A stretch of DNA of 64,000 nucleotides. Origin: Dimorphilus gyrociliatus (lineage: Eukaryota; Animalia; Annelida). Location: positions 868,001 to 932,000 of the forward strand of contig CAJFCJ010000011.1 of the NCBI GenBank assembly GCA_904063045.1. The letters run 5' to 3'. The notes below the pieces were generated by a model that had not been told where the DNA came from, did no database searches, and worked only from the letters and a program-made list of their open reading frames with translations. The position numbers and the translations under genes are program-made. The stretch's first letter is position 1, and the number at the start of each line of letters is the position of its first letter. This document shows, piece by piece, positions 49,779 through 63,177 of this stretch.

Positions 49779-52700
49779 TTATCTTGTTTTTATGTTTTCA
49801 TTGTCATCCTCACTATCTGATGGTTCTTGTACTTCAGAGTTTCCTTCATCATCCTCTCCGTTTTCCATTAACTTCTGCATGAGCATTTCTTCGACTGTGA
49901 TGACGAAATAAATGTCTATGCAAAGAGTATTTCAATTTTTGGTATAACTACAAACCTAAATTTCTCTCTTTCGGCTGAACAATGTATTGAGTAAGAATAT
50001 GAGCTTTACAAGCATCACATTGCTTAGTAGATAAGTCTTGAAGTTCTTTAGGATTACTCCATTCACCAAGGAACGAGAGCTTATGGCACTTTGGACATTC
50101 TGTATACCTCTCGTATCGACATCCTGTAAGAATTTTAATATAATTCTATGAAAAACTTTCAATCATGCATTAATTGTTTATGCCTATGTTAGGCTTAAAT
50201 GAGATTGTAATTACCAGCTAAGATACAAAAGACACTATATTTTTGAGTATAGAATATACCTTTATAGTTGGATAGCGCTCCCTCTGCATCGTATAATATA
50301 GGTAGAAGAACATTCCAAATATCCTCTGTTGTCTCGTCCAACTCCGAATTTATATCATGAACGACTTCAAAGCGCATACAGCTGCTTCCATCTTCGTGTT
50401 TCATATTCTTCATGTACAGTTTTACTGGTTTTTCTAAACTCTTACAATATAAACCTCCTCGCCATATATGAATTGGAACCAAGCTATGTTTTGTATCATT
50501 CGCGCTCACGACAAAGTTTTCGAAAATACCAGGTGGCGTATAGTTTGAAAAGCGGAATACTATAGCAACAGAAGGATTTCCTTTAGTGGATTCGTAATCC
50601 TTCTTAAATTCGGGTGGTGTTTGACTTTCTTCTATTAGCCAAGGTATACAAAATCTTGTTATTTTATGGAGGGTGTCAATTTTCTCCCAGTCATCTCCTT
50701 CGCCAATAGTTCTTTGAGATCTGGTTGATTTGGAAGAGGTTGCCGAAGTTGGACGTTGCCGCTTTGAAGCCGAACTTCGACCAGTTTTACCCCCTTCTGA
50801 CGATTCTGTTTCTTTCTTCGTAGCTGAAAGAAGCTCTTGTCGATCTGTCGGCTTTTGAACCGGGAAACCAATATGAAAATACTCGAGGAGTATAAATAAT
50901 ACTCGAAACATTGGCCTATTTATTTCTGTAGGAACAGAATTTGCCCATAGGGCTCTCAGTAGGTCTCTTGTTATTGTCCCTTTTCTTAATCTGTCTTGCT
51001 TTATTTTTAAGAATCTTGTTTCGGCAATTCCCACCTAAAAATTTCAGTATACAGTATTAAAGAAAGACGAAGTTTTTGTTCAAAAATTTTCCCAACCTGT
51101 TTGAAAACTTCATCAGAATGAAAGTCAACCTTTTCAAAGTCATGTTTAAATAAGGCATTCAAGACTTCACATAACCAAGATGGTCTTAATATTATCCACT
51201 TACTAAGAAAAGGGTGCTCCGAGTACCAAATTACTTTTCCTATGTCGTGTAGATATCGAGTAATGTCAATAATTAAGTGTTGCATACCAAACTTGTTTAT
51301 AATCTCTGCTTTATAATCATCGAATCTTACTAGAGGAAGTTGCATGTCATCGCCTTTTTCCTCAATATAATATTCGACGTCGACCCATAAAGTAGGTATT
51401 GTTTTTGTAACTAAAGGGTAACATTCTTTATTTGATGCTTTCTTAATTATTGCTCTTTGTAAGTCTTCCATTCCAAACAAATTTGCTGAACTGAAGGCTA
51501 CAGCAGTATCGGTGGAATAAGGAAATTCTAACAGTTCAATGTATTTTTGTAGCTGGGCTCGAAGAGCTTGGGGAATATACCTTCTATCTTCTATTCTTCT
51601 AACGTCTCTCTCTATGCTCACTAAGTGATCCATTGCATATTTTCTAAGTCTTTCGCTTACTTTTTGACAAATTTCTTTTGATCTAGATCTGTCTATCTGA
51701 TCACAATGAGTTCCAACCGCCAAAATATGGAGTTTATTTATGCGGCATATTACCCAATCCAGCCATGGAGTCATCTCTTTTTGGAAGTATTCTTCATTAT
51801 ACTTTTTTATATTGAACGTTAACATAATTAGGGAAGGTTCATGCAGGAAGTAATTGTGAGTATAAAGATAATGCGTATTTCCTGAAAAATCCCATAACGC
51901 AACCGGTAAGCATTTTGCCATTGGATCGGTATCTTTCGGATCATGAGGAATAGAGAAATTATGAGTTGTCACACCTACAGTGCTCTCTCCTTTTTCTGTT
52001 AGTCGTGATGTTTGATCGATCATAGATTGAATAAGACTAGTTTTTCCACTATTTTTGGGTCCAATAAGGAGAATTTTTAAACCTCGAAAGACTGTCATTT
52101 CACTCCGTCGCTCAGTAAAGAATTGAACTAAACCCTATAATTTAAATGTTCGTTAAACTTAAGGAAAATAAAGTTAGTTTGTACAAACTTTGACGCCATC
52201 GTCTGCAATTTCGGGAGGGGGATTTGACATAGGATTATTTTTGATATTTAATTGTTGTCCCGACTGCAAATCAAGTCTCTTTAAAGCTGTTTGAGGAACA
52301 ACTCTAATTTGATTTGCACTTAGATCTATCACTCTAACAATCTGCAGTAAAAATTCGGGAAATTGTTTTAGCTCATTTGCTGATAAATCGACGTTTTCAA
52401 TCAATCTTTTCGGCTTTCCTCTGACAGTTAACTGTGGCATTTTGGATATTTTATTGTGACTTAAATTGAGCAACTCCAGTTGCGGAAGAAGAAATAATTC
52501 AGAAGGAATATGCGCTAATTTATTATTAGATATATCAATAATCTTGGTATGTTTTAAATTTTTTACATCAGAGTCAATATTCCTGATACTATTCGTTGCC
52601 AAATGCAAATATTCTAGTCTTTTTAGACCGTAAATGTCTTTTGGAATACTATCAATCTTATTGAATATACAAAAGTGAACATAATTCATTAATTTATAAA

Positions 52701-53297
52701 TAATAAATTTTTGTGACTTACTTGATTATGCTCTAATACTAATTGGACAAGTCTTCTAAGTTTCTCTATACCGTTAATAGTTTTTAATTGATTGTGGCCT
52801 ACTTTCAATCTCGAAATCTTTTTCAATTTTAATAGCACCTTTGGCAGTTGGGTTAAACGATTATGGCTGACATCAAAATCTATAAGATCATCTAGCTCCC
52901 TTAATTTTTCAGGTATTCCTTCATCTTCCAAGAGATTATAGCTCATATCAAGTCTTTCCAAATAGTAGAGAGTACTTATCATCTCGTCAGGCACACTTCT
53001 TAATGCTAAACAACTTATATCCAATTTCCTTAGCGTAGATGACATGTTTCGGACTCCTGACACAGTCGACCGATTCAAATCAATCAACCTAGCTGTTGTG
53101 GGACGCTCTAAACGAATAGGAAATCGCTGAGGAACGAGATGCCGACAATTTTCGTATCCAATTTGAGCGATGGGAATGATATGTTCTGAAGTTGATTTAC
53201 CATACCTTGAAAAACCTCTGGGTGTCCTTTTACGCCTAATTGTAGGTGGAGTTCCCGAGCTAGTTCCAGCCAGCTTCGGTGACGCCGTTCTGGACAT
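49779..53297 (-). CDS. Roco protein (LRR-ROC-COR, no kinase), MFHAS1/MASL1-like, with C-terminal CxxC...CxxC and acidic tail
   Basis: LRRs (LERLDMSYNLL, LELLNLSHNKI, NNPMSNPPPEI); ROC GPKNSGKT, STVGV, WDFSG, GTHCD; COR IPTLW..YLHDIGKVIWY..RPSWL; CPKCHK..CDACK. The 5' end and last exon are tentative. Confidence 0.85.
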
Positions 53298-55308
53298 TAT
53301 TTCGGCTTTTGACGGTTGTGAAGCTGATTTTGTATTCCTAATAACAAATATCGAGAGATCACTAGGCGAATCGATTCTTTTCAATAATCTATTGATTGGT
53401 ATATTATCTACTATTCATGTTTTTCTCATGAGTTTACGCGACACAATGAACTCCTGGCGTTATTGTTTATACAAATACTCCTAACATAAAGAGAGAGCGT
53501 AATTAAAAATTTCATAATTTAGATGATAGCAGGAGTGAAATTATTGCAAATATAAGAACGCTATATGAATGAATAGTACAAGTAGCAATCTACTTATAAA
53601 ACAGCTTACACAAATAAAATTTATTATACATATAGATATTTTATATATCCCACTTCTCGAATATTGGAATCTATGCGATTAGTGTTAGTTTACTCGAAAT
53701 CTACTTGAATAGATTTGAACGTGTTAAAAAACAAGTACCCTGACTGAAAATTTGCTTAAATTATATACAAATACAAGGCAATTAAAAAATATATGTTGAG
53801 GGGACGGATCGTAATATAAGTAATAGTCTGGTGAGATTTTTCATAGTAACTTTCAGAGATCCGATTAAGATTTCTGCCTAATTAAAACCCTATTTATTAA
53901 AATTCTTAAAAGCGAAAAAACTAACTCTAATGGACCGTTTTTCCTTTTTTACGCCCCTTTTGACTGGACTTTATTGAATATAGCACGTTTTGTGTAATGA
54001 GGAGTTATTGGTTTTTCCTTGAAAAGCAATTTTTATTGATGTATCGAAAGAGAAAGAATACTTATTTAGTTTTCCAAAACTTGAAGCACATTTTAAGCTA
54101 TTAGTTTTGGCTTTAAACTGGGTCGAACGTGAGTTTTACAGTGTACTTTTCTCACCTTGTAGATATCTATTCCCTAAGCATCAAACAAATATTTTTTTTT
54201 AATAAATAGGCTCAATTAGCCTTATCAAAAATCTTTTATCAAATAGCAAAGAGAAGTAATTAAAAAAGTGGTTAACAGTCTTTAATGGTATTTTTAATTA
54301 CAGTAGCAGTATTCCTTGAATGACAGTTTGTCATTTTTCGATAGATTTATTATTTATTAACATAGTCTTTTCTCTAATTAAGTTACATTTTATAGCTTTT
54401 TATTCCCTTCTAATTGAATGTAATTAATATACTTTATGTTAGAGATTAAAGTTTCACTTCCATTGTATTTTCCTTTCAATCTGTTTTTATGTTTATTTTC
54501 TTATTTACTACATATTTACAATTATATAAATTATTATATATTGATCTATTTGTATGACTGTCAAATTATCAAGATTTCAAAAGAAAGGAATAAGAAAACA
54601 ATTTCATATATATTACTAAGAAAAGTCCAAGTTTACTGAGAAAGGCTGTATTTTTGATAGTCTTTCATTTGTCTTATATAATATCAATGATAAAAATAAT
54701 ACTAACATATTAGATATCCTTCAAACTTATCAGCAAAAGAATATAAGAATAAAATCGCTATACTTCTTCTCTCTATGTTATCTTGCTTTTTTTTAGGAAA
54801 GAAAAAGTAGAATCGAATCCATTAATCCCTTGGAGAAGAATTTTTAGATCGATTTTAGTTTAAATTGCTTTCGAAGGTATTCAATTTCTTACCTGAAGAT
54901 CCAGTAATAAAGTTTGAACAAATAGCAGTCTGTAGATTTGTCTGTCGACTTATGGATATTTTCGGTAATAGGCCTGTTATCACTTAAACCTTCCTTTTAT
55001 TGACTTATACGTAACGTCTATCGATCAATTCTTTTGTATTTGTTGATAATCGCAAAGTTGTTAAAAAGAAGTAATTATACGGAGAGAGCTGTGCTAAGTG
55101 TTTAACGAGAAAGTTTGTTGGCAAAAATCGAAAGAAATTCTACTTTAGTATAAAAATATAATAGAAACGCGACCGATTATGGTCTCGGTTTACGTCTCTT
55201 TTTTCACTTAATCGATATAACATCGATAAAAAATCTGTTCTGGGCTCTTTTTAAATGTGATCGATTTTATTAGCTTTCTGATTAAAGTTAGGCCTTATAA
55301 AATCTTAG

Positions 55309-56888: not shown

Positions 56889-58424
56889 TTAGATTGCAAT
56901 TGTCTTTGTTTCTACTTTTCTTAATTCTATAAACGCATATAAAAAATAACTTTTTATAGCGAAAGTTGAAATGAGTTGAAAGACGAGAGATTGGTAAATA
57001 GGAAAATTTTTTAAGAATCTACTTGTGATTGCTGTTGTTGCTGCAGATGTAAAATCAGGTGTTGTAATTTCAGTTGCTAATGAAAAGAAAATAGATATTG
57101 TTATTATTTTCATTTGCTTTATTGTAAAAGAATATTGGAAAAAAGGTATTTACTAACTCTCTTGTACTTTTGTGCTAGTAGCAGTCGTCATTTCAGTAGC
57201 TATTTGATCAAAGGAATAATGGATTATTGTAACAAGCATTTTATCAATGCGCCTATTTAGTTACTTGATTTGGTCGTTGTAGGTTCAGGAGAGGTTATTT
57301 CAGCAGTTGTAGCTATTTGTGAGAGAAATCATAAGATAGGTATACTTTATCTTAGTAATACAAAGTATCATAAGGCGCCTATATCTATGACCTCAGTCAT
57401 AATGATTAATTGTTGCCTATTGTTGTTAAACAAAAACCCTTCTTTCTATTTATAAAACTAATCAACTTTTTATGGTATTGATATATTTTCAATAGCTAAC
57501 TTTCAGTAGACTATATATAACTGAACTTGACCTACAAATTGCTCTTTTACGTCACCCCGATCGTTCAGATGTTGTATAAAATCCTCATTGGAAATTTGCT
57601 TTCAGTTCTAACGATTTTCATTCATAGACAATGTAAAACATTGCATATATACATCTTATATAGGAGACCGCTAAACGTTATCGATATTATTTCTTGTATA
57701 TACAATATAAAGGTTACTTCCAACAGAATTCAAGAACATTTTTAAGAAAATGATGATTCTGTTTACCTATATTTAGCTGCATATTACCACAATTAAAATT
57801 CTTCGCCTTATTGTCGTCCATTAAATTCTGGGCTTGTTGACATACAACTCCATTTGATTCGTAACAGTCTGTTCTTTTGGACCACTTTGCATCTGAAGGA
57901 CTGATCGAAGCACAATTATCGACATTTGGTATCCCATTTTTATAATTTTGAAACGTTAACATTGTTCTATCAAAGTAGCGATTCCTCAAGTAGGGCACGT
58001 CATTGGGTTCATCACCTGTTAATGTTAAAAGGCAGGTGAAAGCTGTCAAGCATCAAGAAAGTAAAGAAACTTACTAAACCATTTAATTCCTAACCAGAAA
58101 CCAGAAACAAAATTGGAATCAGGAAGTTTTTCAATAACATCTCCTACAAACTTGTTCATGTCATCTTGCTCTACTTTTACCATTATAGCTCCAGCACCCT
58201 CACAGCAAGCTCTGATTTGAAAAAGTATGAAACTGAGTTTTACAGAATTATGCACCATCTTACTTTGCTTCAACCCAACTGAAACCATTAGTTGAAGAAT
58301 CAGCTCCAATGCAATAAGCTTTATTATTTATTTCGTATAGCTCCCAACCATCAGGACATTGGCAGAATATCTTACAGACTAAAACATAAAATATGTAAAT
58401 AAAAAAGTTATTTATTCTTCCCAT
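56889..58424 (-). CDS. Secreted C-type lectin-like domain protein with Thr-rich mucin tail (paralog A)
   Basis: MGRINNFFIYIFYVLVCKIFCQCPDGW..FSWVEAK|ACCEGAGAIMVKV..FWLGIK..DNCASI..KWSKRTDCYESNGVVCQ, then Thr-rich micro-exons. Internal exons at 57330-57760 and the 3' end are uncertain. Confidence 0.7.
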
Positions 58425-59150
58425 GTTACTTGCTAGTAGCCACCTGAAAGAAATATGACGTATGCTTTATTCAACCTCCATTATAAGGCGTTAGAATAAC
58501 AATATCGTCTTTGATTATTGAAAATCATTGCAAATATTGTTTATTTTTAATTGATCTTGGGTAAATCTTTCAAAGATTTAGAACAGTAACAATCTTATTG
58601 TTAAATGAAAAATATTCTGGTGATTTATTACGGAAAGTCGGCCATTCATAGAATAATAAATAAATAGAAAAATGCTGAATTTCTATTCATAATGTTTATA
58701 AGATGCTTTTTGGTTTAATTTCTATATTTATTACATTTTTCATTTCTTAAATGATCAAAGCATCCGTATGAATGAAATATTAAGCTTTTACAATAAGTAA
58801 CTCACTAACTCTTTAAATACTAATATACGGTATATACAGTATATATGTATTTTAATTATCGATAATAATTCATAAAAGCATTTGGAAAAGAAATTTGTAT
58901 TTAGAGTATGCTATTAAATATGGAGAAAATAAAAACAATAAATTTAGAATGTGTCTGATTTAGCATTCACGTTAACATAAATCATTTATGTCTTTCTATA
59001 GTTAATTTTGAAAAAGACCTTTATGTTAACACAATGCCATAATATATCGTAAAAGGTTTCAAATAATAATAATGAATAAATGAAAGTATTCATTAAAGAC
59101 TTGTACATTTAGGACGGTCATTTCACTCTATTGGTTTGAAGATTCGAAAT

Positions 59151-61102
59151 ATGTATTATTTCTTTCGTGAAATATTCGTTATAGCAGGAATTTTTATTTT
59201 AACAACTATATCTGCTCAACCCAATGGCATGTCTCCACCTGATGAAAAAGGTCCTCCTCAACCTCCTAAAAATCGAGACAAAGGGATAAACTCAACAGAA
59301 GATGAATCAGAATCTTTCCCTGATCCTTATAACCGTCATTACAGTAAGAGTTTTTTAAATAACAAGCTTCAATTGAAGGATAAATTAAAATACATAATAT
59401 GCCCTAATGAACAGGTATTGAAGAGTATGAAGCAGCTCAAGCTTGCTCTGATCAAACATATTTGACAGCTGGTTGGTATCAATCACAACCATTTATTTAT
59501 TTGGATGAATGGAATAATGTAACAGGTCTTTGTGCTTAGATATATTTATATAGAGTTTTTAAGATGTTTTACTATTAGGACCATATGTTTCTATGCTACA
59601 AAATGTTGTAAAAATATGCTGTGGCAAGTATGGAATAGTTGAATTTAAAGAGAGATATTTACATCAGCCAAATATGGAAAGTTTTTATGAAAATGAAACA
59701 TTCTTAGTACCAGTGGCGTATACTACACTATCAATGGTAACTGAACCAAACTTAGAAGATTCAAAATATATGCCAGTGGTTGAATCACCAGGTTTGAAAT
59801 CACTGAACATAGCTAATGAAATTGAGAATATTCATTTTTCTTTTCGTAGGGGCGATAATAATTAGAAATAAGAAAAAATTTCAGGTAACGCCTGGATTAG
59901 ACATAATTATTGCTGGTTGGCCTCTCCTCGTTCTTATTATTATATCGGCTCTTTACGCAGGCTTACTTATGTGGGTTTTGGTAAGTTACTTAACTCGTTC
60001 GTCTTTGAAATAACAATAATATAATAATTTCTGACAAGGATTGCCGATGTAATCCGGAGCAATTTCCCAGAGAATTTCATAGTGGGATGTGGGAAGGATT
60101 TTGGTGGGCCTTTGTAACTATGACCACTGTTGGATACGGAGATAAGGCTCCCATGTCAGTTTCTGCAAGAATTTTGGGAATAATCTGGATTCTTGTTGGT
60201 CTGGTTATTTTATCAATTTTTACAGCCGCAATGACATCTTCTCTAACTGATGCTGGAAAAGATGACAAAAATTTAAAAGATGTTGACGTAGCTGTTGTCA
60301 ATGGATCTCATCAATACCAGTTGGCAATAGCTCATGGAGGTAATCCGAAAAGTATGTAGTTTGAATACGATTCAAAAGAATAAAAACATTTAACAATCCT
60401 TACTTCCACTAAAAGTTTACGAAAACATAGAAGATATTATTTATGACGTGACAGATGGATACATAAACTATGCTTTGATTGAACATTATTCAGCAATGTA
60501 TTCTTTAAACACTCATATGAAAACGAATGGTAAAGTTAAAGATTCGATTGAGATAGTTGGAGAAATACAAGATCCTTCTAGTTATGGAATACGATTACTG
60601 AGAAATAAGAGAAAAAGTTGTTTCTTTGAAACCATAATGCGAGTTCGTCATAAAATTAGTGCACTGATAATGACAAATGCGACTGCATTAAGAGTGAAAT
60701 TATAAAATTCAGTATAAACTTAATAGGATTATCATTTCAATTTATTTCAGGCTATTACTTCAAAAGGACTCTCATCATCTGAAGCAAAAGCAGTTTTTCA
60801 GAATATTGACTGGATAGCTTTACTAGTGATGGGTGGAATCTGGCTTCTCCTTTGCTTCATATTGTTAATATGGCAATTTGGTATTAGAAATCGGTTAAAA
60901 GTAACCGACGTGTTTTATAAACGAAATGAATCAAGTTTGTATTCAAAGAAATAGAATTTAACTTTTTGTTTGAAAAATATATTACCTCTTAGGAAAACCT
61001 CCTATACGCTCTATATCACAGCAACATGTTTTATCATCCCCTGGCTTTCCAAAGAAACGAACGTTAAGCGATAATCAAACAAATATTACAGAAGTTGATT
61101 GA
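59151..61102 (+). CDS. GluR0/AvGluR1-like channel: periplasmic-binding-protein-type S1/S2 domain fused to a K+-selective pore (TVGYGD), about 510 aa, 8 exons
   Basis: Exons 59151-59343, 59415-59525, 59579-59791, 59850-59980, 60039-60351, 60416-60693, 60751-60934 and 60993-61102 sum to 1533 nt in frame. Signal peptide; M1 WPLLVLIIISALYAGLLMWVLD; pore FWWAFVTMTTVGYGDK; M3 LVILSIFTAAMTSSLT; S2 start LKDVDVAVVNGS; third TM WIALLVMGGIWLLLCFILLIW. Confidence 0.85.
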
Positions 61103-63177
61103 CATCGTATAAAGAATATAATGAAATTATATCACACACATCATCTAGTTTTAGGACATTTATAAATAATCAAATGGTTGTATTTCCTTAGGTTGATGTT
61201 TTATCTTTTGTCATATTACAAATCTAAAATACCTTTTAAATTGGAGTTTAAATAGTAAAGTGCCTGTTTTGGATATTTATGCCTGATTATTGTCCATAAA
61301 AAAAATAATTGCATATATTTTATTCTTGTGAAATAATTATATTTATATGAATCGATTAAAAATGAAGCTAAACAATAAATATGTTTTTGTCATAACGTTG
61401 CTAGATTTCCTATGGTAAACATGCTGTATTATAATATTATGTTAATGTAACATTTTAAAAATTTGTTGGATAATTTCAACCTTTCATAATTAGCAATACT
61501 TTAGAAAAAGTAATTGAGAAAATGTCTGTTTCTTCAACTATTTCAACTGTTTTTACTATATTAAATAAACTTTTATTGAATTACTCATAAATACTCCTGA
61601 GCTGAATATGAGACTCATGTAGCTCCCTCTGCTGTACTTTTCGTCTGGAAAAAGTCGATGAAAAGTGCGCAATAGTTTCATACAGTTAAAGTATTAGTCT
61701 TTATCAATTAATTAATATGAAGTAAACGTTTGGTAAAGATGTGTATCTAAGCGCGTGTTTTTTCCCACTTGAACACAAAACGTAGAGTTACAAATAATAT
61801 TGAATATAGACTTGTTTAATTTGCTAAATTTGAATAAAATGGCAACTAATAGATTACTGAAGTGCAATTTTATGATAAAGTAAACTATTTTCTATTGAAA
61901 ATGCCATTAGCATACTTTTTTTCAAGGTTATAAAGCATGCTAGTTCTCCTGTAAGCTGTATAACAAGAAAAATCCTTTTCTTTTATTTGTTAGAGTTAAC
62001 ACGCTGTCCAACAGACTGCACTTTATAATCGTATTGATCGGCAAATAGAAACAATATTTGTCCTTCATTCTTACATTAAAGATGTCTCGAAAACTGTATT
62101 TCTTGGAATAATTCTGTAAGTTAGCGTACAGTTAACTATTCAAATATATTAGAAACACAATTTAGCATACCTTATAATATGTTTTAAGAATACAATAAAT
62201 TCAACGGCAAACTCGAAAAATATCATTGGAAGATATAATTTTCCATCTAACTTGTCTAAGACCTCAAGGTATATAATAAATTGATACAAAAATAAAGTTA
62301 ATTAAGGTGCAATTAAAAAAGCGATTCGTGTTCTCTTTCGTTCCTGGTGTCAATGATATGTCGATAGAATTCATGATATTGATTGCATTACTTTAAAGAC
62401 TTATTTATTGTATCCATTTTGATCCAGAGGGATTGATTTAGAGAATTTTAATATTACTAATAAATTTTTGCCTAATTTGTATAGATTCTATTTTATTTCA
62501 GTTTTTATTGAATTAAACGAAAACACATAAATATTTGCAAGTAACCACCGTGAAAATTAAACCATGATTAATTTGAGCTTCCTTTGTTCAATGCTTTTCA
62601 AATATAGTTTTTACTTTATTCAAAAGAGCTTGATATCATATTTAGTTTATATTTATTGATAACTAAACGCAAAATATTCCAGTTTCTTTGACAGAATCAA
62701 TAAAGAATTTATTTCTTCAAGATCTTCTAGCTTTGGTACTAATTATCAAGAGAAAATATTTACCAAGAGACGCCCACAGTAATATCGAATTTCTGAAAGT
62801 TATAATGTTCAATTCTTATTTTAATATGCAATAATTTAAGCCTACTTGCAATAGTAAAATACTTCGTGGATCAGGAATATTATTGTCCTAATGGATAAAC
62901 TAAAAGAATATAGATGATTTATAGATAATGATTGAATTTATTACTAACTAAAAAAATAACTAAATAATTTAAGCATTCCACGTTCAAAGGTAACTTTTAT
63001 GAGGATCTATATTCTTCTAGACAGCAGATCAAAACAGTTAAAAATATTTTAGACAGGTAGCCAGTCCAGCCAGTGAACGTCAACTTTTGGTTTCCAATGG
63101 TGTCACGGAAAACATGCGATCAATATAGTAGTTTAGAATTCAAATCAGACTAGGACGGCTGAGCTTAACACTTGAAT

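What the first reader, a model, noticed from the sequence alone, without database searches (positions are those of the whole stretch)
59151..61102. Animal gene for a glutamate-receptor-shaped, K+-selective channel (GluR0/AvGluR1-like)
Seen in sequence: signal peptide, a ~150-aa extracellular segment, M1, a pore helix with an intact K+ filter TTVGYGD (60123-60143), a second TM, a second extracellular segment, a third TM and a tail. The second TM, SIFTAAMTSSLT, aligns with the iGluR gate SSYTANLAAFLT. The next segment, LKDVDVAVVNGS..EDIIYDVTDGYINYALIE, resembles the S2 lobe of GluR0 and bacterial amino-acid-binding proteins. Established: this split S1/S2 clamshell around an inverted K+ pore defines cyanobacterial GluR0, and the rotifer AvGluR1 has a K+-channel-like filter plus the M4 helix, whereas canonical animal iGluRs lack GYG. 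Inference: a compact (no ATD), intron-bearing, ligand-gated K+ (hyperpolarising) receptor from a poorly characterised invertebrate family, possibly a new inhibitory transmitter or chemosensory system.
Basis: partly seen in the sequence, partly recalled or inferred. Interest (0 to 1): 0.9.

Follow-up and report, generated by a model that had tools for sequence, protein, structure and literature searches.

The report
Animal GluR0-like potassium-filter receptor channel
This is a real, expressed gene of the small annelid Dimorphilus gyrociliatus, and it encodes a glutamate-receptor-shaped channel with a potassium-channel pore; it belongs to a large, unstudied animal family that may be directly ligand-gated inhibitory receptors.

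Summary
Window 59151-61102 (+) is an 8-exon, 510-aa gene, identical to DgyrCDS8531 of Dimorphilus gyrociliatus. A public transcript contig skips all seven predicted introns.

The protein runs: signal peptide, S1, M1, pore helix with TTVGYGD, M2, S2, a third TM helix (iGluR M4) and a basic tail. There is no amino-terminal domain.

An AlphaFold2 model (core pLDDT >90) matches only iGluR LBD-TMD structures across its length. Its best domain match is the GluR0 ligand-binding core (1II5, Z 20.8). A family profile aligns with bacterial GluR0-like channels from S1 to S2 (hhalign E 2e-42).

About 500 homologues were found (519 at E≤1e-5): many in cnidarians, a few in hemichordates, annelids, a brachiopod and a flatworm. 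All carry automatic names only. TVGYGD is invariant in 48/48 aligned members. Shared intron positions with Nematostella indicate an old, vertically inherited gene.

The S1 arginine that binds the ligand's α-carboxylate is absent and often replaced by Asp/Glu, so the ligand is probably not an α-amino acid.

K+ selectivity and ligand gating are inferred, not shown. AvGluR1 has the same motif yet passes Na+.

I found no paper describing the family, and the scan had not noted it on other DNA.

The parts
58938..61264 (+). Transcribed region (5'UTR, 8 exons, 3'UTR) as covered by a public transcript contig
   Evidence: one 1908-nt contig, 0 mismatches, with 7 GT..AG joints.
59151..59343 (+). Exon 1: start codon, signal peptide (aa 1-22, 59151-59216) and a disordered Pro/Asp/Glu-rich linker
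   Evidence: (pLDDT <50 for aa 23-65).
59415..59525 (+). Exon 2: start of S1 (first beta strand and the P-F/Y motif)
59579..59791 (+). Exon 3: main part of S1, with the conserved CC pair and the segment where bacterial relatives carry the ligand-binding Arg (here Glu157/Pro158)
59850..59980 (+). Exon 4: end of S1, pre-M1 and M1
60039..60351 (+). Exon 5: NPEQFP pre-pore motif, pore helix, K+ filter, M2 with the FTAAMTSSLT gate region, and the start of S2 (NGS motif)
   Evidence: Ion_trans_2 57.9 bits, Lig_chan 42.9 bits.
60123..60143 (+). Selectivity-filter signature TTVGYGD (aa 245-251)
   Evidence: TVGYGD is invariant in 48/48 family members.
60416..60693 (+). Exon 6: rest of S2, with Glu343 at the conserved Asp position, the YG motif and conserved Cys389
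60751..60934 (+). Exon 7: S2-M4 linker and the third TM helix (iGluR M4, aa 434-474, 60811-60933), followed by basic residues
60993..61102 (+). Exon 8: cytoplasmic tail and the stop codon

Best explanation
The gene encodes one subunit of a tetrameric receptor channel of the iGluR/GluR0 superfamily. After signal-peptide cleavage, a two-lobed S1/S2 clamshell sits outside the cell. M1, a re-entrant pore loop entering from the cytoplasmic side, and M2 form an inverted K+-channel pore. A third helix (M4) and a basic tail complete the subunit, and there is no amino-terminal domain. I propose that a small extracellular ligand closes the clamshell, which pulls on the M2-S2 linkers and opens the helix-bundle gate. 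K+ would then leave through a canonical TVGYG filter, hyperpolarising or shunting the cell. The ligand is probably not an alpha-amino acid: the S1 arginine that holds the alpha-carboxylate is absent, while the S2 acidic residue and the Gly-Ser/Thr turn are kept. Shown here: the gene model, its expression and splicing, the domain order, the folds, homology to GluR0 along S1-pore-S2, filter conservation, and old vertical descent in animals. Inferred: tetramer formation, ligand gating, K+ selectivity and an inhibitory role.
For: Gene and transcript.
Pore: Ion_trans_2 at E 1e-15 and Lig_chan above its gathering score. The stretch FWWAFVTMTTVGYGD closely resembles Kv pores. TVGYGD, both pore-helix Trp residues and the M2 Gly270 are invariant in 48 members.
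Fold: AF2 mean pLDDT is 79, with the core above 90. All 50 listed Foldseek PDB hits are iGluR LBD-TMD chains of 426-499 columns. All Swiss-Prot hits are iGluRs or plant GLRs, and the alignments reach M4. VIA-align's best hit is the GluR0 ligand-binding core 1II5: Z 20.8, rmsd 2.7 A, 212/221 residues. Atlas bacterial GluR0-like models give TM 0.72-0.74 by hit over aa 75-411.
Sequence homology beyond the pore: hhalign of the family against bacterial GluR0-like proteins gives probability 100%, E 2e-42, 297 columns, aa 78-393. An S2-only profile hits the GluR0 LBDs 2PYY (2.6e-7) and 1IIT (3e-4) and amino-acid-binding proteins.
Pocket: S2 Asp is kept in 43/48 members (Glu in this protein) and Ser/Thr in 44/48. 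There is no Arg at the column where bacteria have an invariant Arg; the family has Asp/Glu there in 19/48.
M4 is present in all animal members and absent from the bacterial 350-aa relatives.
Age: bilaterian members form one clade. Three intron positions and phases are shared with Nematostella, a hemichordate and Owenia.
Precedent: GluR0 is a glutamate-gated K+ channel with inverted topology (PMC12332018, PMC13099474).
Against: There are no functional data for any family member. AvGluR1 carries TXVGYG yet is permeable to Na+ (PMC3483616, citing Janovjak 2011), so the motif alone does not prove K+ selectivity. Loss of the ligand-binding arginine, and an S1 lobe too diverged for Pfam or PDB sequence searches to recognise, leave open that the clamshell binds nothing small. 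The model is a monomer, so the tetramer and filter geometry were not tested. Homomeric function is not assured, because Dimorphilus has at least three paralogues.
Confidence: 0.55

Rival explanations
1. It is a ligand-gated channel of the same architecture, but a poorly selective cation channel (Na+ and K+) despite the GYG signature. It would then be excitatory or mixed rather than inhibitory.
For: AvGluR1 has the TXVGYG motif yet passes Na+ (PMC3483616). The filter here works in the inverted iGluR context with an added M4 helix.
Against: The whole pore helix, filter and following Asp (FWWAxVTMTTVGYGD) are Kv-like and invariant across about 50 divergent members. That pattern is what selection for a true K+ filter would produce. 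Bacterial GluR0, with a similar pore, is K+-selective (PMC12332018).
Confidence: 0.2
2. It is a K+ channel whose clamshell is no longer a small-molecule sensor. It could be a leak or background channel, be gated by ions, pH or a protein partner, or be an obligate or modulatory subunit of a heteromer.
For: The canonical Arg is absent, and S1 is not recognised by Pfam or by a PDB profile search. Residues at the aligned ligand-contact positions vary widely between members. Cnidarian members add CUB, Ig, FN3 or EGF ectodomains typical of protein-protein contacts. Dimorphilus has several paralogues.
Against: The S2 Asp/Glu (46/48) and the Gly-Ser/Thr turn that contact the ligand in relatives are retained. 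The clamshell is modelled with high confidence and superposes on glutamate-bound GluR0. Insect IRs likewise lack these residues yet bind odorants (my own knowledge, not tested here).
Confidence: 0.2
3. It is an artefact: a bacterial contaminant, a recent horizontal transfer or a decaying pseudogene.
For: The pore region is about as similar to bacterial GluR0-like proteins as to distant animal members.
Against: The gene has seven spliceosomal introns removed in a transcript and an intact ORF. It lies on a 1.3-Mb animal contig. Intron positions are shared with cnidarian, hemichordate and annelid orthologues. The tree is broadly congruent with the species tree.
Confidence: 0.01

Closest known systems
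GluR0 (Synechocystis Slr1257) and bacterial 'Group 1' K+-filter glutamate receptors
   Same: The order S1, M1, P-loop (TxVGYG), M2, S2 is the same. The LBD superposes on 1II5 at Z 20.8. Profile-profile alignment gives E 2e-42 over S1 to S2. The NPxxFP pre-pore motif and the FTAxxTSSLT inner-helix motif are shared.
   Different: This is an animal gene with introns. It has an extra C-terminal TM helix (M4) and a cytoplasmic tail. The Arg that binds the alpha-carboxylate is absent, conserved extracellular cysteines are present, and S1 is strongly diverged.
AvGluR1 of the rotifer Adineta vaga
   Same: It is an animal iGluR-superfamily subunit that keeps the K+-channel signature and has M4.
   Different: AvGluR1 is reported to have the standard eukaryotic iGluR architecture and to be gated by glutamate and hydrophobic amino acids (PMC12332018, PMC12226733). 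This protein has no ATD and lacks the Arg. No rotifer protein appeared among the homologues listed (best 120-150 per search), and the S2 profile did not reach any eukaryotic iGluR LBD in the PDB.
Classical metazoan iGluRs (AKDF, NMDA, Epsilon, Lambda clades)
   Same: The LBD-TMD fold including M4 matches (Foldseek probability 1.0, 426-499 columns). Pfam Lig_chan matches above its gathering score.
   Different: The pore is a K+ filter rather than a Q/R/N pore loop. SIFTAAMTSSLT stands in place of SYTANLAAF. There is no ATD. The family is not among the four clades listed in recent surveys (PMC13648236, PMC6307864).
Insect/protostome ionotropic receptors (IRs)
   Same: They are ATD-less iGluR relatives whose binding pockets have lost canonical amino-acid-binding residues and have diversified (from my own knowledge).
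   Different: IRs derive from AKDF-type iGluRs and have non-selective cation pores. No specific relationship was seen here (one search lists them only as distant look-alikes).
Voltage-gated K+ channel pore (Kv1/Shaker)
   Same: The best PDB sequence hits are Kv1.3 and Shaker pores, with a near-identical pore helix and filter.
   Different: There is no voltage sensor, the membrane orientation is inverted, and an extracellular clamshell is inserted around the pore.

Membership tests
GluR0-type K+-filter glutamate receptor (bacterial Group 1) | The two halves of a periplasmic-binding-protein clamshell (S1, S2) flank the pore module | tested here: met
   hhalign E 2e-42 over aa 78-393; 1II5 at Z 20.8; S2 profile hits GluR0 LBDs.
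GluR0-type K+-filter glutamate receptor (bacterial Group 1) | K+-channel signature TxVGYG in the pore loop | tested here: met
   TTVGYGD at 60123-60143; Ion_trans_2 at E 1e-15; invariant in 48/48 members.
GluR0-type K+-filter glutamate receptor (bacterial Group 1) | Only two TM helices, with the protein ending after S2 | tested here: not met
   A third TM helix (aa 434-474) and a tail are present in this protein and in all animal members. They are absent in the bacterial 350-aa relatives.
GluR0-type K+-filter glutamate receptor (bacterial Group 1) | Alpha-amino-acid binding triad (S1 Arg, S2 Ser/Thr turn, S2 Asp) | tested here: not met
   The Arg column holds Glu in this protein and no Arg in 48 members. 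Ser/Thr is kept in 44/48 and Asp/Glu in 46/48.
GluR0-type K+-filter glutamate receptor (bacterial Group 1) | Glutamate-gated, K+-selective current | not testable with these tools
   This needs electrophysiology.
Eukaryotic ionotropic glutamate receptor (Pfam Lig_chan; AKDF/NMDA/Epsilon/Lambda) | Lig_chan profile match above the gathering score | tested here: met
   42.9 bits against a cut-off of 30.8 on exon 5. Ion_trans_2 scores higher, and several relatives fall just below the cut-off.
Eukaryotic ionotropic glutamate receptor (Pfam Lig_chan; AKDF/NMDA/Epsilon/Lambda) | LBD-TMD fold with an M4 helix after S2 | tested here: met
   Foldseek alignments to GluA, GluN and GluD chains and to Swiss-Prot iGluRs cover about aa 76-510.
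Eukaryotic ionotropic glutamate receptor (Pfam Lig_chan; AKDF/NMDA/Epsilon/Lambda) | Amino-terminal domain (ANF_receptor / LIVBP-like) | tested here: not met
   Only 53 disordered residues lie between the signal peptide and S1. No ANF_receptor hit occurs in this protein or in 20 relatives.
Eukaryotic ionotropic glutamate receptor (Pfam Lig_chan; AKDF/NMDA/Epsilon/Lambda) | SYTANLAAF gate motif and a Q/R/N-type non-selective pore loop | tested here: not met
   The gate region reads SIFTAAMTSSLT and the pore loop is a K+ filter.
AvGluR1-like receptors | K+ signature combined with the full eukaryotic architecture (ATD + LBD + M1-M4) | tested here: not met
   The K+ signature and M4 are present but there is no ATD. 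The architecture of AvGluR1 is taken from PMC12332018.
AvGluR1-like receptors | Closest sequence relationship to AvGluR1 | tested here: inconclusive
   The AvGluR1 sequence could not be obtained. No rotifer hit was listed, and no eukaryotic iGluR LBD was reached by the S2 profile at E<=10.
K+ channel pore superfamily (Pfam Ion_trans_2) | Profile match above the gathering score, with pore helix, filter and inner helix | tested here: met
   57.9 bits against a cut-off of 22.5; Kv1.3 and Shaker are the top PDB sequence hits.

The most novel reading that the evidence does not exclude
Cnidarians and several bilaterian phyla (hemichordates, annelids, brachiopods, flatworms) keep a fifth iGluR-superfamily clade that current classifications do not list. 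Its members would be GluR0-derived, ATD-less subunits with M4 that form directly ligand-gated, K+-selective channels. They would give fast inhibitory or chemosensory responses to a ligand that is not an alpha-amino acid, possibly a cationic amine, given that acidic residues occupy both charge positions of the pocket.
Probability: 0.35. Interest if true: 0.85.

Novelty: new variant of a known kind. Interest (0 to 1): 0.72.

Why it matters
Animal iGluRs are treated as non-selective, excitatory cation channels. Fast inhibition is assigned to Cl- channels, and K+-mediated inhibition to G-protein pathways. In 2010 the combination of a glutamate-receptor binding domain with a K+ filter was thought to be confined to bacteria (PMC2950845), and AvGluR1 has since been treated as a lone oddity. 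This work shows that a whole, conserved and expressed animal family has that combination. It has about 500 database members, at least six old subfamilies in cnidarians, and survivors in five phyla. The family makes two questions directly testable. Do animals have ionotropic K+ receptors? How did the iGluR pore lose K+ selectivity while gaining M4 and the ATD? It could also supply compact ligand-gated K+ channels as silencing tools.

Tried and rejected
- Pfam on the S1 and S2 exons separately found nothing, and Pfam on ten full-length relatives found only the pore. Sequence profiles alone do not show the clamshell; it needed hhalign, an S2-only PDB profile search and structure comparison.
- The S1-only profile had no hit against the PDB.
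- A full-length profile against the PDB was swamped by K+ channel pores.
- There is no second copy in the window (tblastn).
- The scan's own notes had nothing by words or by sequence.
- The Janovjak 2011 and Lomash 2013 papers are not held. Details on AvGluR1 therefore come second-hand from PMC12332018, PMC12226733 and PMC3483616.
- I could not bring AvGluR1 or classical iGluR sequences into the session, so the tree contains only family members and bacterial relatives. It cannot place the family relative to the eukaryotic iGluR crown.
- Contamination, recent transfer and pseudogene readings were considered and rejected.

Full report
**Observation**

Reading 58600-61700 and splicing by eye gave eight exons on the + strand: 59151-59343, 59415-59525, 59579-59791, 59850-59980, 60039-60351, 60416-60693, 60751-60934 and 60993-61102. 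All have GT..AG borders, the introns are 53-71 nt, and the ORF is 510 codons. The translation is identical to a database protein, DgyrCDS8531 of Dimorphilus gyrociliatus. The window therefore comes from this small annelid with a compact genome. A 1908-nt contig from a public sequencing run lies on 58938-61264 without a mismatch and skips exactly the seven predicted introns. The gene is thus transcribed and spliced as modelled.

**Anatomy**

Hydropathy and an AlphaFold2 model (built on a 48-sequence family alignment; mean pLDDT 79; 242 residues at 90 or above) give the following layout:

| Residues | Element |
|---|---|
| 1-22 | signal peptide |
| 23-75 | disordered acidic/proline-rich linker |
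| 76-186 | S1 |
| 187-217 | pre-M1 and M1 |
| 229-245 | pore helix |
| 245-251 | filter |
| 257-293 | long inner helix M2 |
| 294-412 | S2 |
| 413-433 | poorly modelled linker |
| 434-474 | third TM helix |
| 475-510 | basic tail |

Five N-x-S/T sequons and the family's conserved cysteines (a CC pair in S1, and Cys389 in S2) lie in the segments predicted to be extracellular. A cleavable signal peptide, S1 and S2 outside, and a basic stretch after the last helix give the inverted pore orientation of iGluRs and GluR0. That orientation was recently confirmed experimentally for GluR0 itself (PMC13099474).

**Pore**

Exon 5 alone matches Pfam Ion_trans_2 (57.9 bits) and Lig_chan (42.9 bits against a gathering score of 30.8). 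The best PDB sequence matches are Kv1.3 and Shaker pores, which share FWWAxVTMTTVGYGD. In the family alignment TVGYGD, both pore-helix tryptophans and the inner-helix Gly270 are invariant in 48/48 members. The M1 to M2 stretch is almost as similar to bacterial GluR0-like proteins as to distant animal members. The shared elements include an NPxxFP motif before the pore helix and FTAxxTSSLT in the position of the iGluR SYTANLAAF gate.

**Binding domain**

Pfam does not recognise S1 or S2, either in this protein or in ten relatives. Three independent tests nevertheless show the clamshell.

1. Profile-profile comparison of the animal family with 38 bacterial 350-aa proteins that do carry SBP_bac_3 + Lig_chan-Glu_bd + Ion_trans_2 gives probability 100%, E 2e-42 and 297 aligned columns, from residue 78 to 393.
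2. A profile of S2 alone, without any pore residues, finds an ancestral Gln/Arg-binding protein (2.5e-8), the Nostoc GluR0 LBD 2PYY (2.6e-7), Synechocystis GluR0 1IIT/1II5 (3e-4) and LAO-, ArtJ- and GlnP-type binding proteins. It finds no eukaryotic iGluR LBD.
3. The structural evidence agrees:
   - All 50 listed Foldseek PDB hits are AMPA, NMDA or GluD LBD-TMD chains over 426-499 columns.
   - All Swiss-Prot AFDB hits are iGluRs or plant GLRs, with alignments reaching the last helix.
   - VIA-align ranks the glutamate-bound GluR0 ligand-binding core 1II5 first: Z 20.8, rmsd 2.7 A, 212 of 221 residues, model range 76-410.
   - ESM-Atlas models of cyanobacterial and proteobacterial GluR0-like channels give TM 0.72-0.74 by hit.

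**Ligand pocket**

In the bacterial relatives the Arg that holds the ligand's alpha-carboxylate is invariant. At the aligned column this protein has Glu157. None of the 48 family members has Arg there; they have Asp in 14, Glu in 5, and otherwise Thr, Ser or Val. The exact register is uncertain by one or two residues, but only 9 of 48 members have any Arg within four columns. This agrees with an earlier first-stage note on the same window (s1-084138). By contrast, the S2 Gly-Ser/Thr turn (Ser/Thr in 44/48; NGS here) and the S2 acidic residue (Asp in 43/48; Glu343 here) are kept. The pocket is therefore non-canonical. An alpha-amino acid is unlikely as ligand, and two acidic positions hint at a cationic ligand, which is speculation.

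**Family and history**

- **Size and annotation.** An exhaustive HMMER search with exon 5 returned many 440-600-aa proteins with the pore at the same relative position. These align with the whole protein at E down to about 1e-69 in a local search. Word-indexed searches give 486-519 relatives at E≤1e-5. All carry only automatic names such as 'uncharacterized', 'potassium channel domain-containing', or mistaken 'Kv' and 'Cubilin' labels.
- **Named sources.** These are many cnidarians (Nematostella, Acropora, Hydra, Clytia, Rhopilema and others), three hemichordates, the annelids Owenia and Dimorphilus, the brachiopod Lingula and the flatworm Macrostomum. Dimorphilus has at least three paralogues.
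- **N-terminal domains.** No member has an ANF_receptor ATD. Many cnidarian members carry CUB+Ig, FN3 or EGF modules instead.
- **M4.** The third helix, ending in a conserved W-E motif, is present in all animal members and absent from the bacterial relatives.
- **Tree.** In an ML tree rooted on the bacterial sequences, all nine bilaterian members plus one Nematostella paralogue form one clade (SH-aLRT 95). Hemichordates group together, as do Dimorphilus, Owenia and Lingula. Cnidarians hold at least six older subfamilies.
- **Introns.** Three of this gene's intron positions, with their phases, coincide with introns of Nematostella and Glandiceps orthologues. Two of them coincide exactly in Owenia, whose third lies two alignment columns away in the same phase. 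Two further introns shared by those three species are missing in Dimorphilus, as expected for its compacted genome. The gene is therefore an old eumetazoan gene inherited vertically. It is not a contaminant or a recent transfer.

**Mechanism and its limits**

The most economical reading is a tetrameric, extracellular-ligand-gated channel built like GluR0 plus M4, conducting K+. GluR0 is the functional precedent (PMC12332018, PMC13099474). The main caveat is AvGluR1, which has TXVGYG yet passes Na+ (PMC3483616). Selectivity therefore has to be measured. The missing Arg and the diverged S1 leave room for a channel whose clamshell no longer senses a small molecule. I put the ligand-gated K+ reading at about 0.55, each of those two rivals at about 0.2, and artefact readings at about 0.01.

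**Comparison with what is known**

The protein works like GluR0 and is homologous to it along S1-pore-S2. It fails the membership tests for 'two TM only', 'amino-acid triad' and 'prokaryotic'. It shares the LBD-TMD-M4 fold and a Lig_chan match with eukaryotic iGluRs. It fails the tests for the ATD, the SYTANLAAF motif and the Q/R/N pore. It is also not among the Lambda, NMDA, Epsilon and AKDF clades recognised in surveys up to 2026 (PMC6307864, PMC12226733, PMC13648236). It differs from AvGluR1 in lacking the ATD.

**Literature**

Full-text searches for AvGluR1, GluR0 (all 31 papers since 2012), GluR0 with Nematostella, 'GluR0-like', TXVGYG/iGluR/metazoan combinations and 'ligand-gated/glutamate-gated K+ channel' found no description of this animal family. 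Ger et al. 2010 wrote that the combination of a K+ filter with a glutamate-binding domain was then known only in bacteria. Subscription-only papers could not be searched, so prior mention cannot be excluded.

**Verdict**

Function remains inferred. I class it as a new variant of a known kind: a GluR0-derived, M4-bearing, ATD-less metazoan clade. Interest is high because one oocyte experiment would settle whether animals have ionotropic K+ receptors.

Noticed in passing
window 51007-53384 (- strand): Three adjacent ORFs carry LRR_8, LRR_8 and Roc + COR-A domains. Together they look like a ROCO-type (LRR-Roc-COR) GTPase gene.
   Followed up: partly
window 57714-58424 (- strand): Cysteine-rich ORFs directly upstream of the channel gene look C-type-lectin-like by eye. 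Pfam found nothing on the separate pieces.
   Followed up: partly
P0017, P0166, P0055, P0097 (CUB+Ig); P0112, P0213 (FN3); P0007, P0265 (EGF): Many cnidarian members of the channel family carry adhesion-type ectodomains N-terminal to S1, where classical iGluRs have the ATD. This suggests protein partners or anchoring.
   Followed up: partly
L004:1001-3031 (DgyrCDS12770, P0160) and AFDB A0A7I8VUK0 (DgyrCDS8581): These are two further Dimorphilus paralogues. CDS12770 has only three introns, one of them shared with the window gene. CDS8581 is 669 aa with an N-terminal extension of about 335 aa of unknown nature.
   Followed up: partly
window 60039-60351 compared with L001, L002, L003: The pore exon of Dimorphilus is a fusion of three ancestral exons. 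Introns at alignment columns 311 (phase 2) and 365 (phase 0) are present in Nematostella, Owenia and Glandiceps but lost here, consistent with genome compaction.
   Followed up: yes
P0088, P0118 (Macrostomum lignano): The flatworm members are predicted as fusions with an SGF29 tudor domain. These are probably merged gene models rather than real architectures.
   Followed up: no
window 60039-60050 (aa 217-220, DCRC): At the cytoplasmic end of M1 this protein has Cys218 and Cys220, where the family consensus is D-R-x-x-N-P. The pair is unique to this protein among the 48 aligned members. Its significance is unknown.
   Followed up: no
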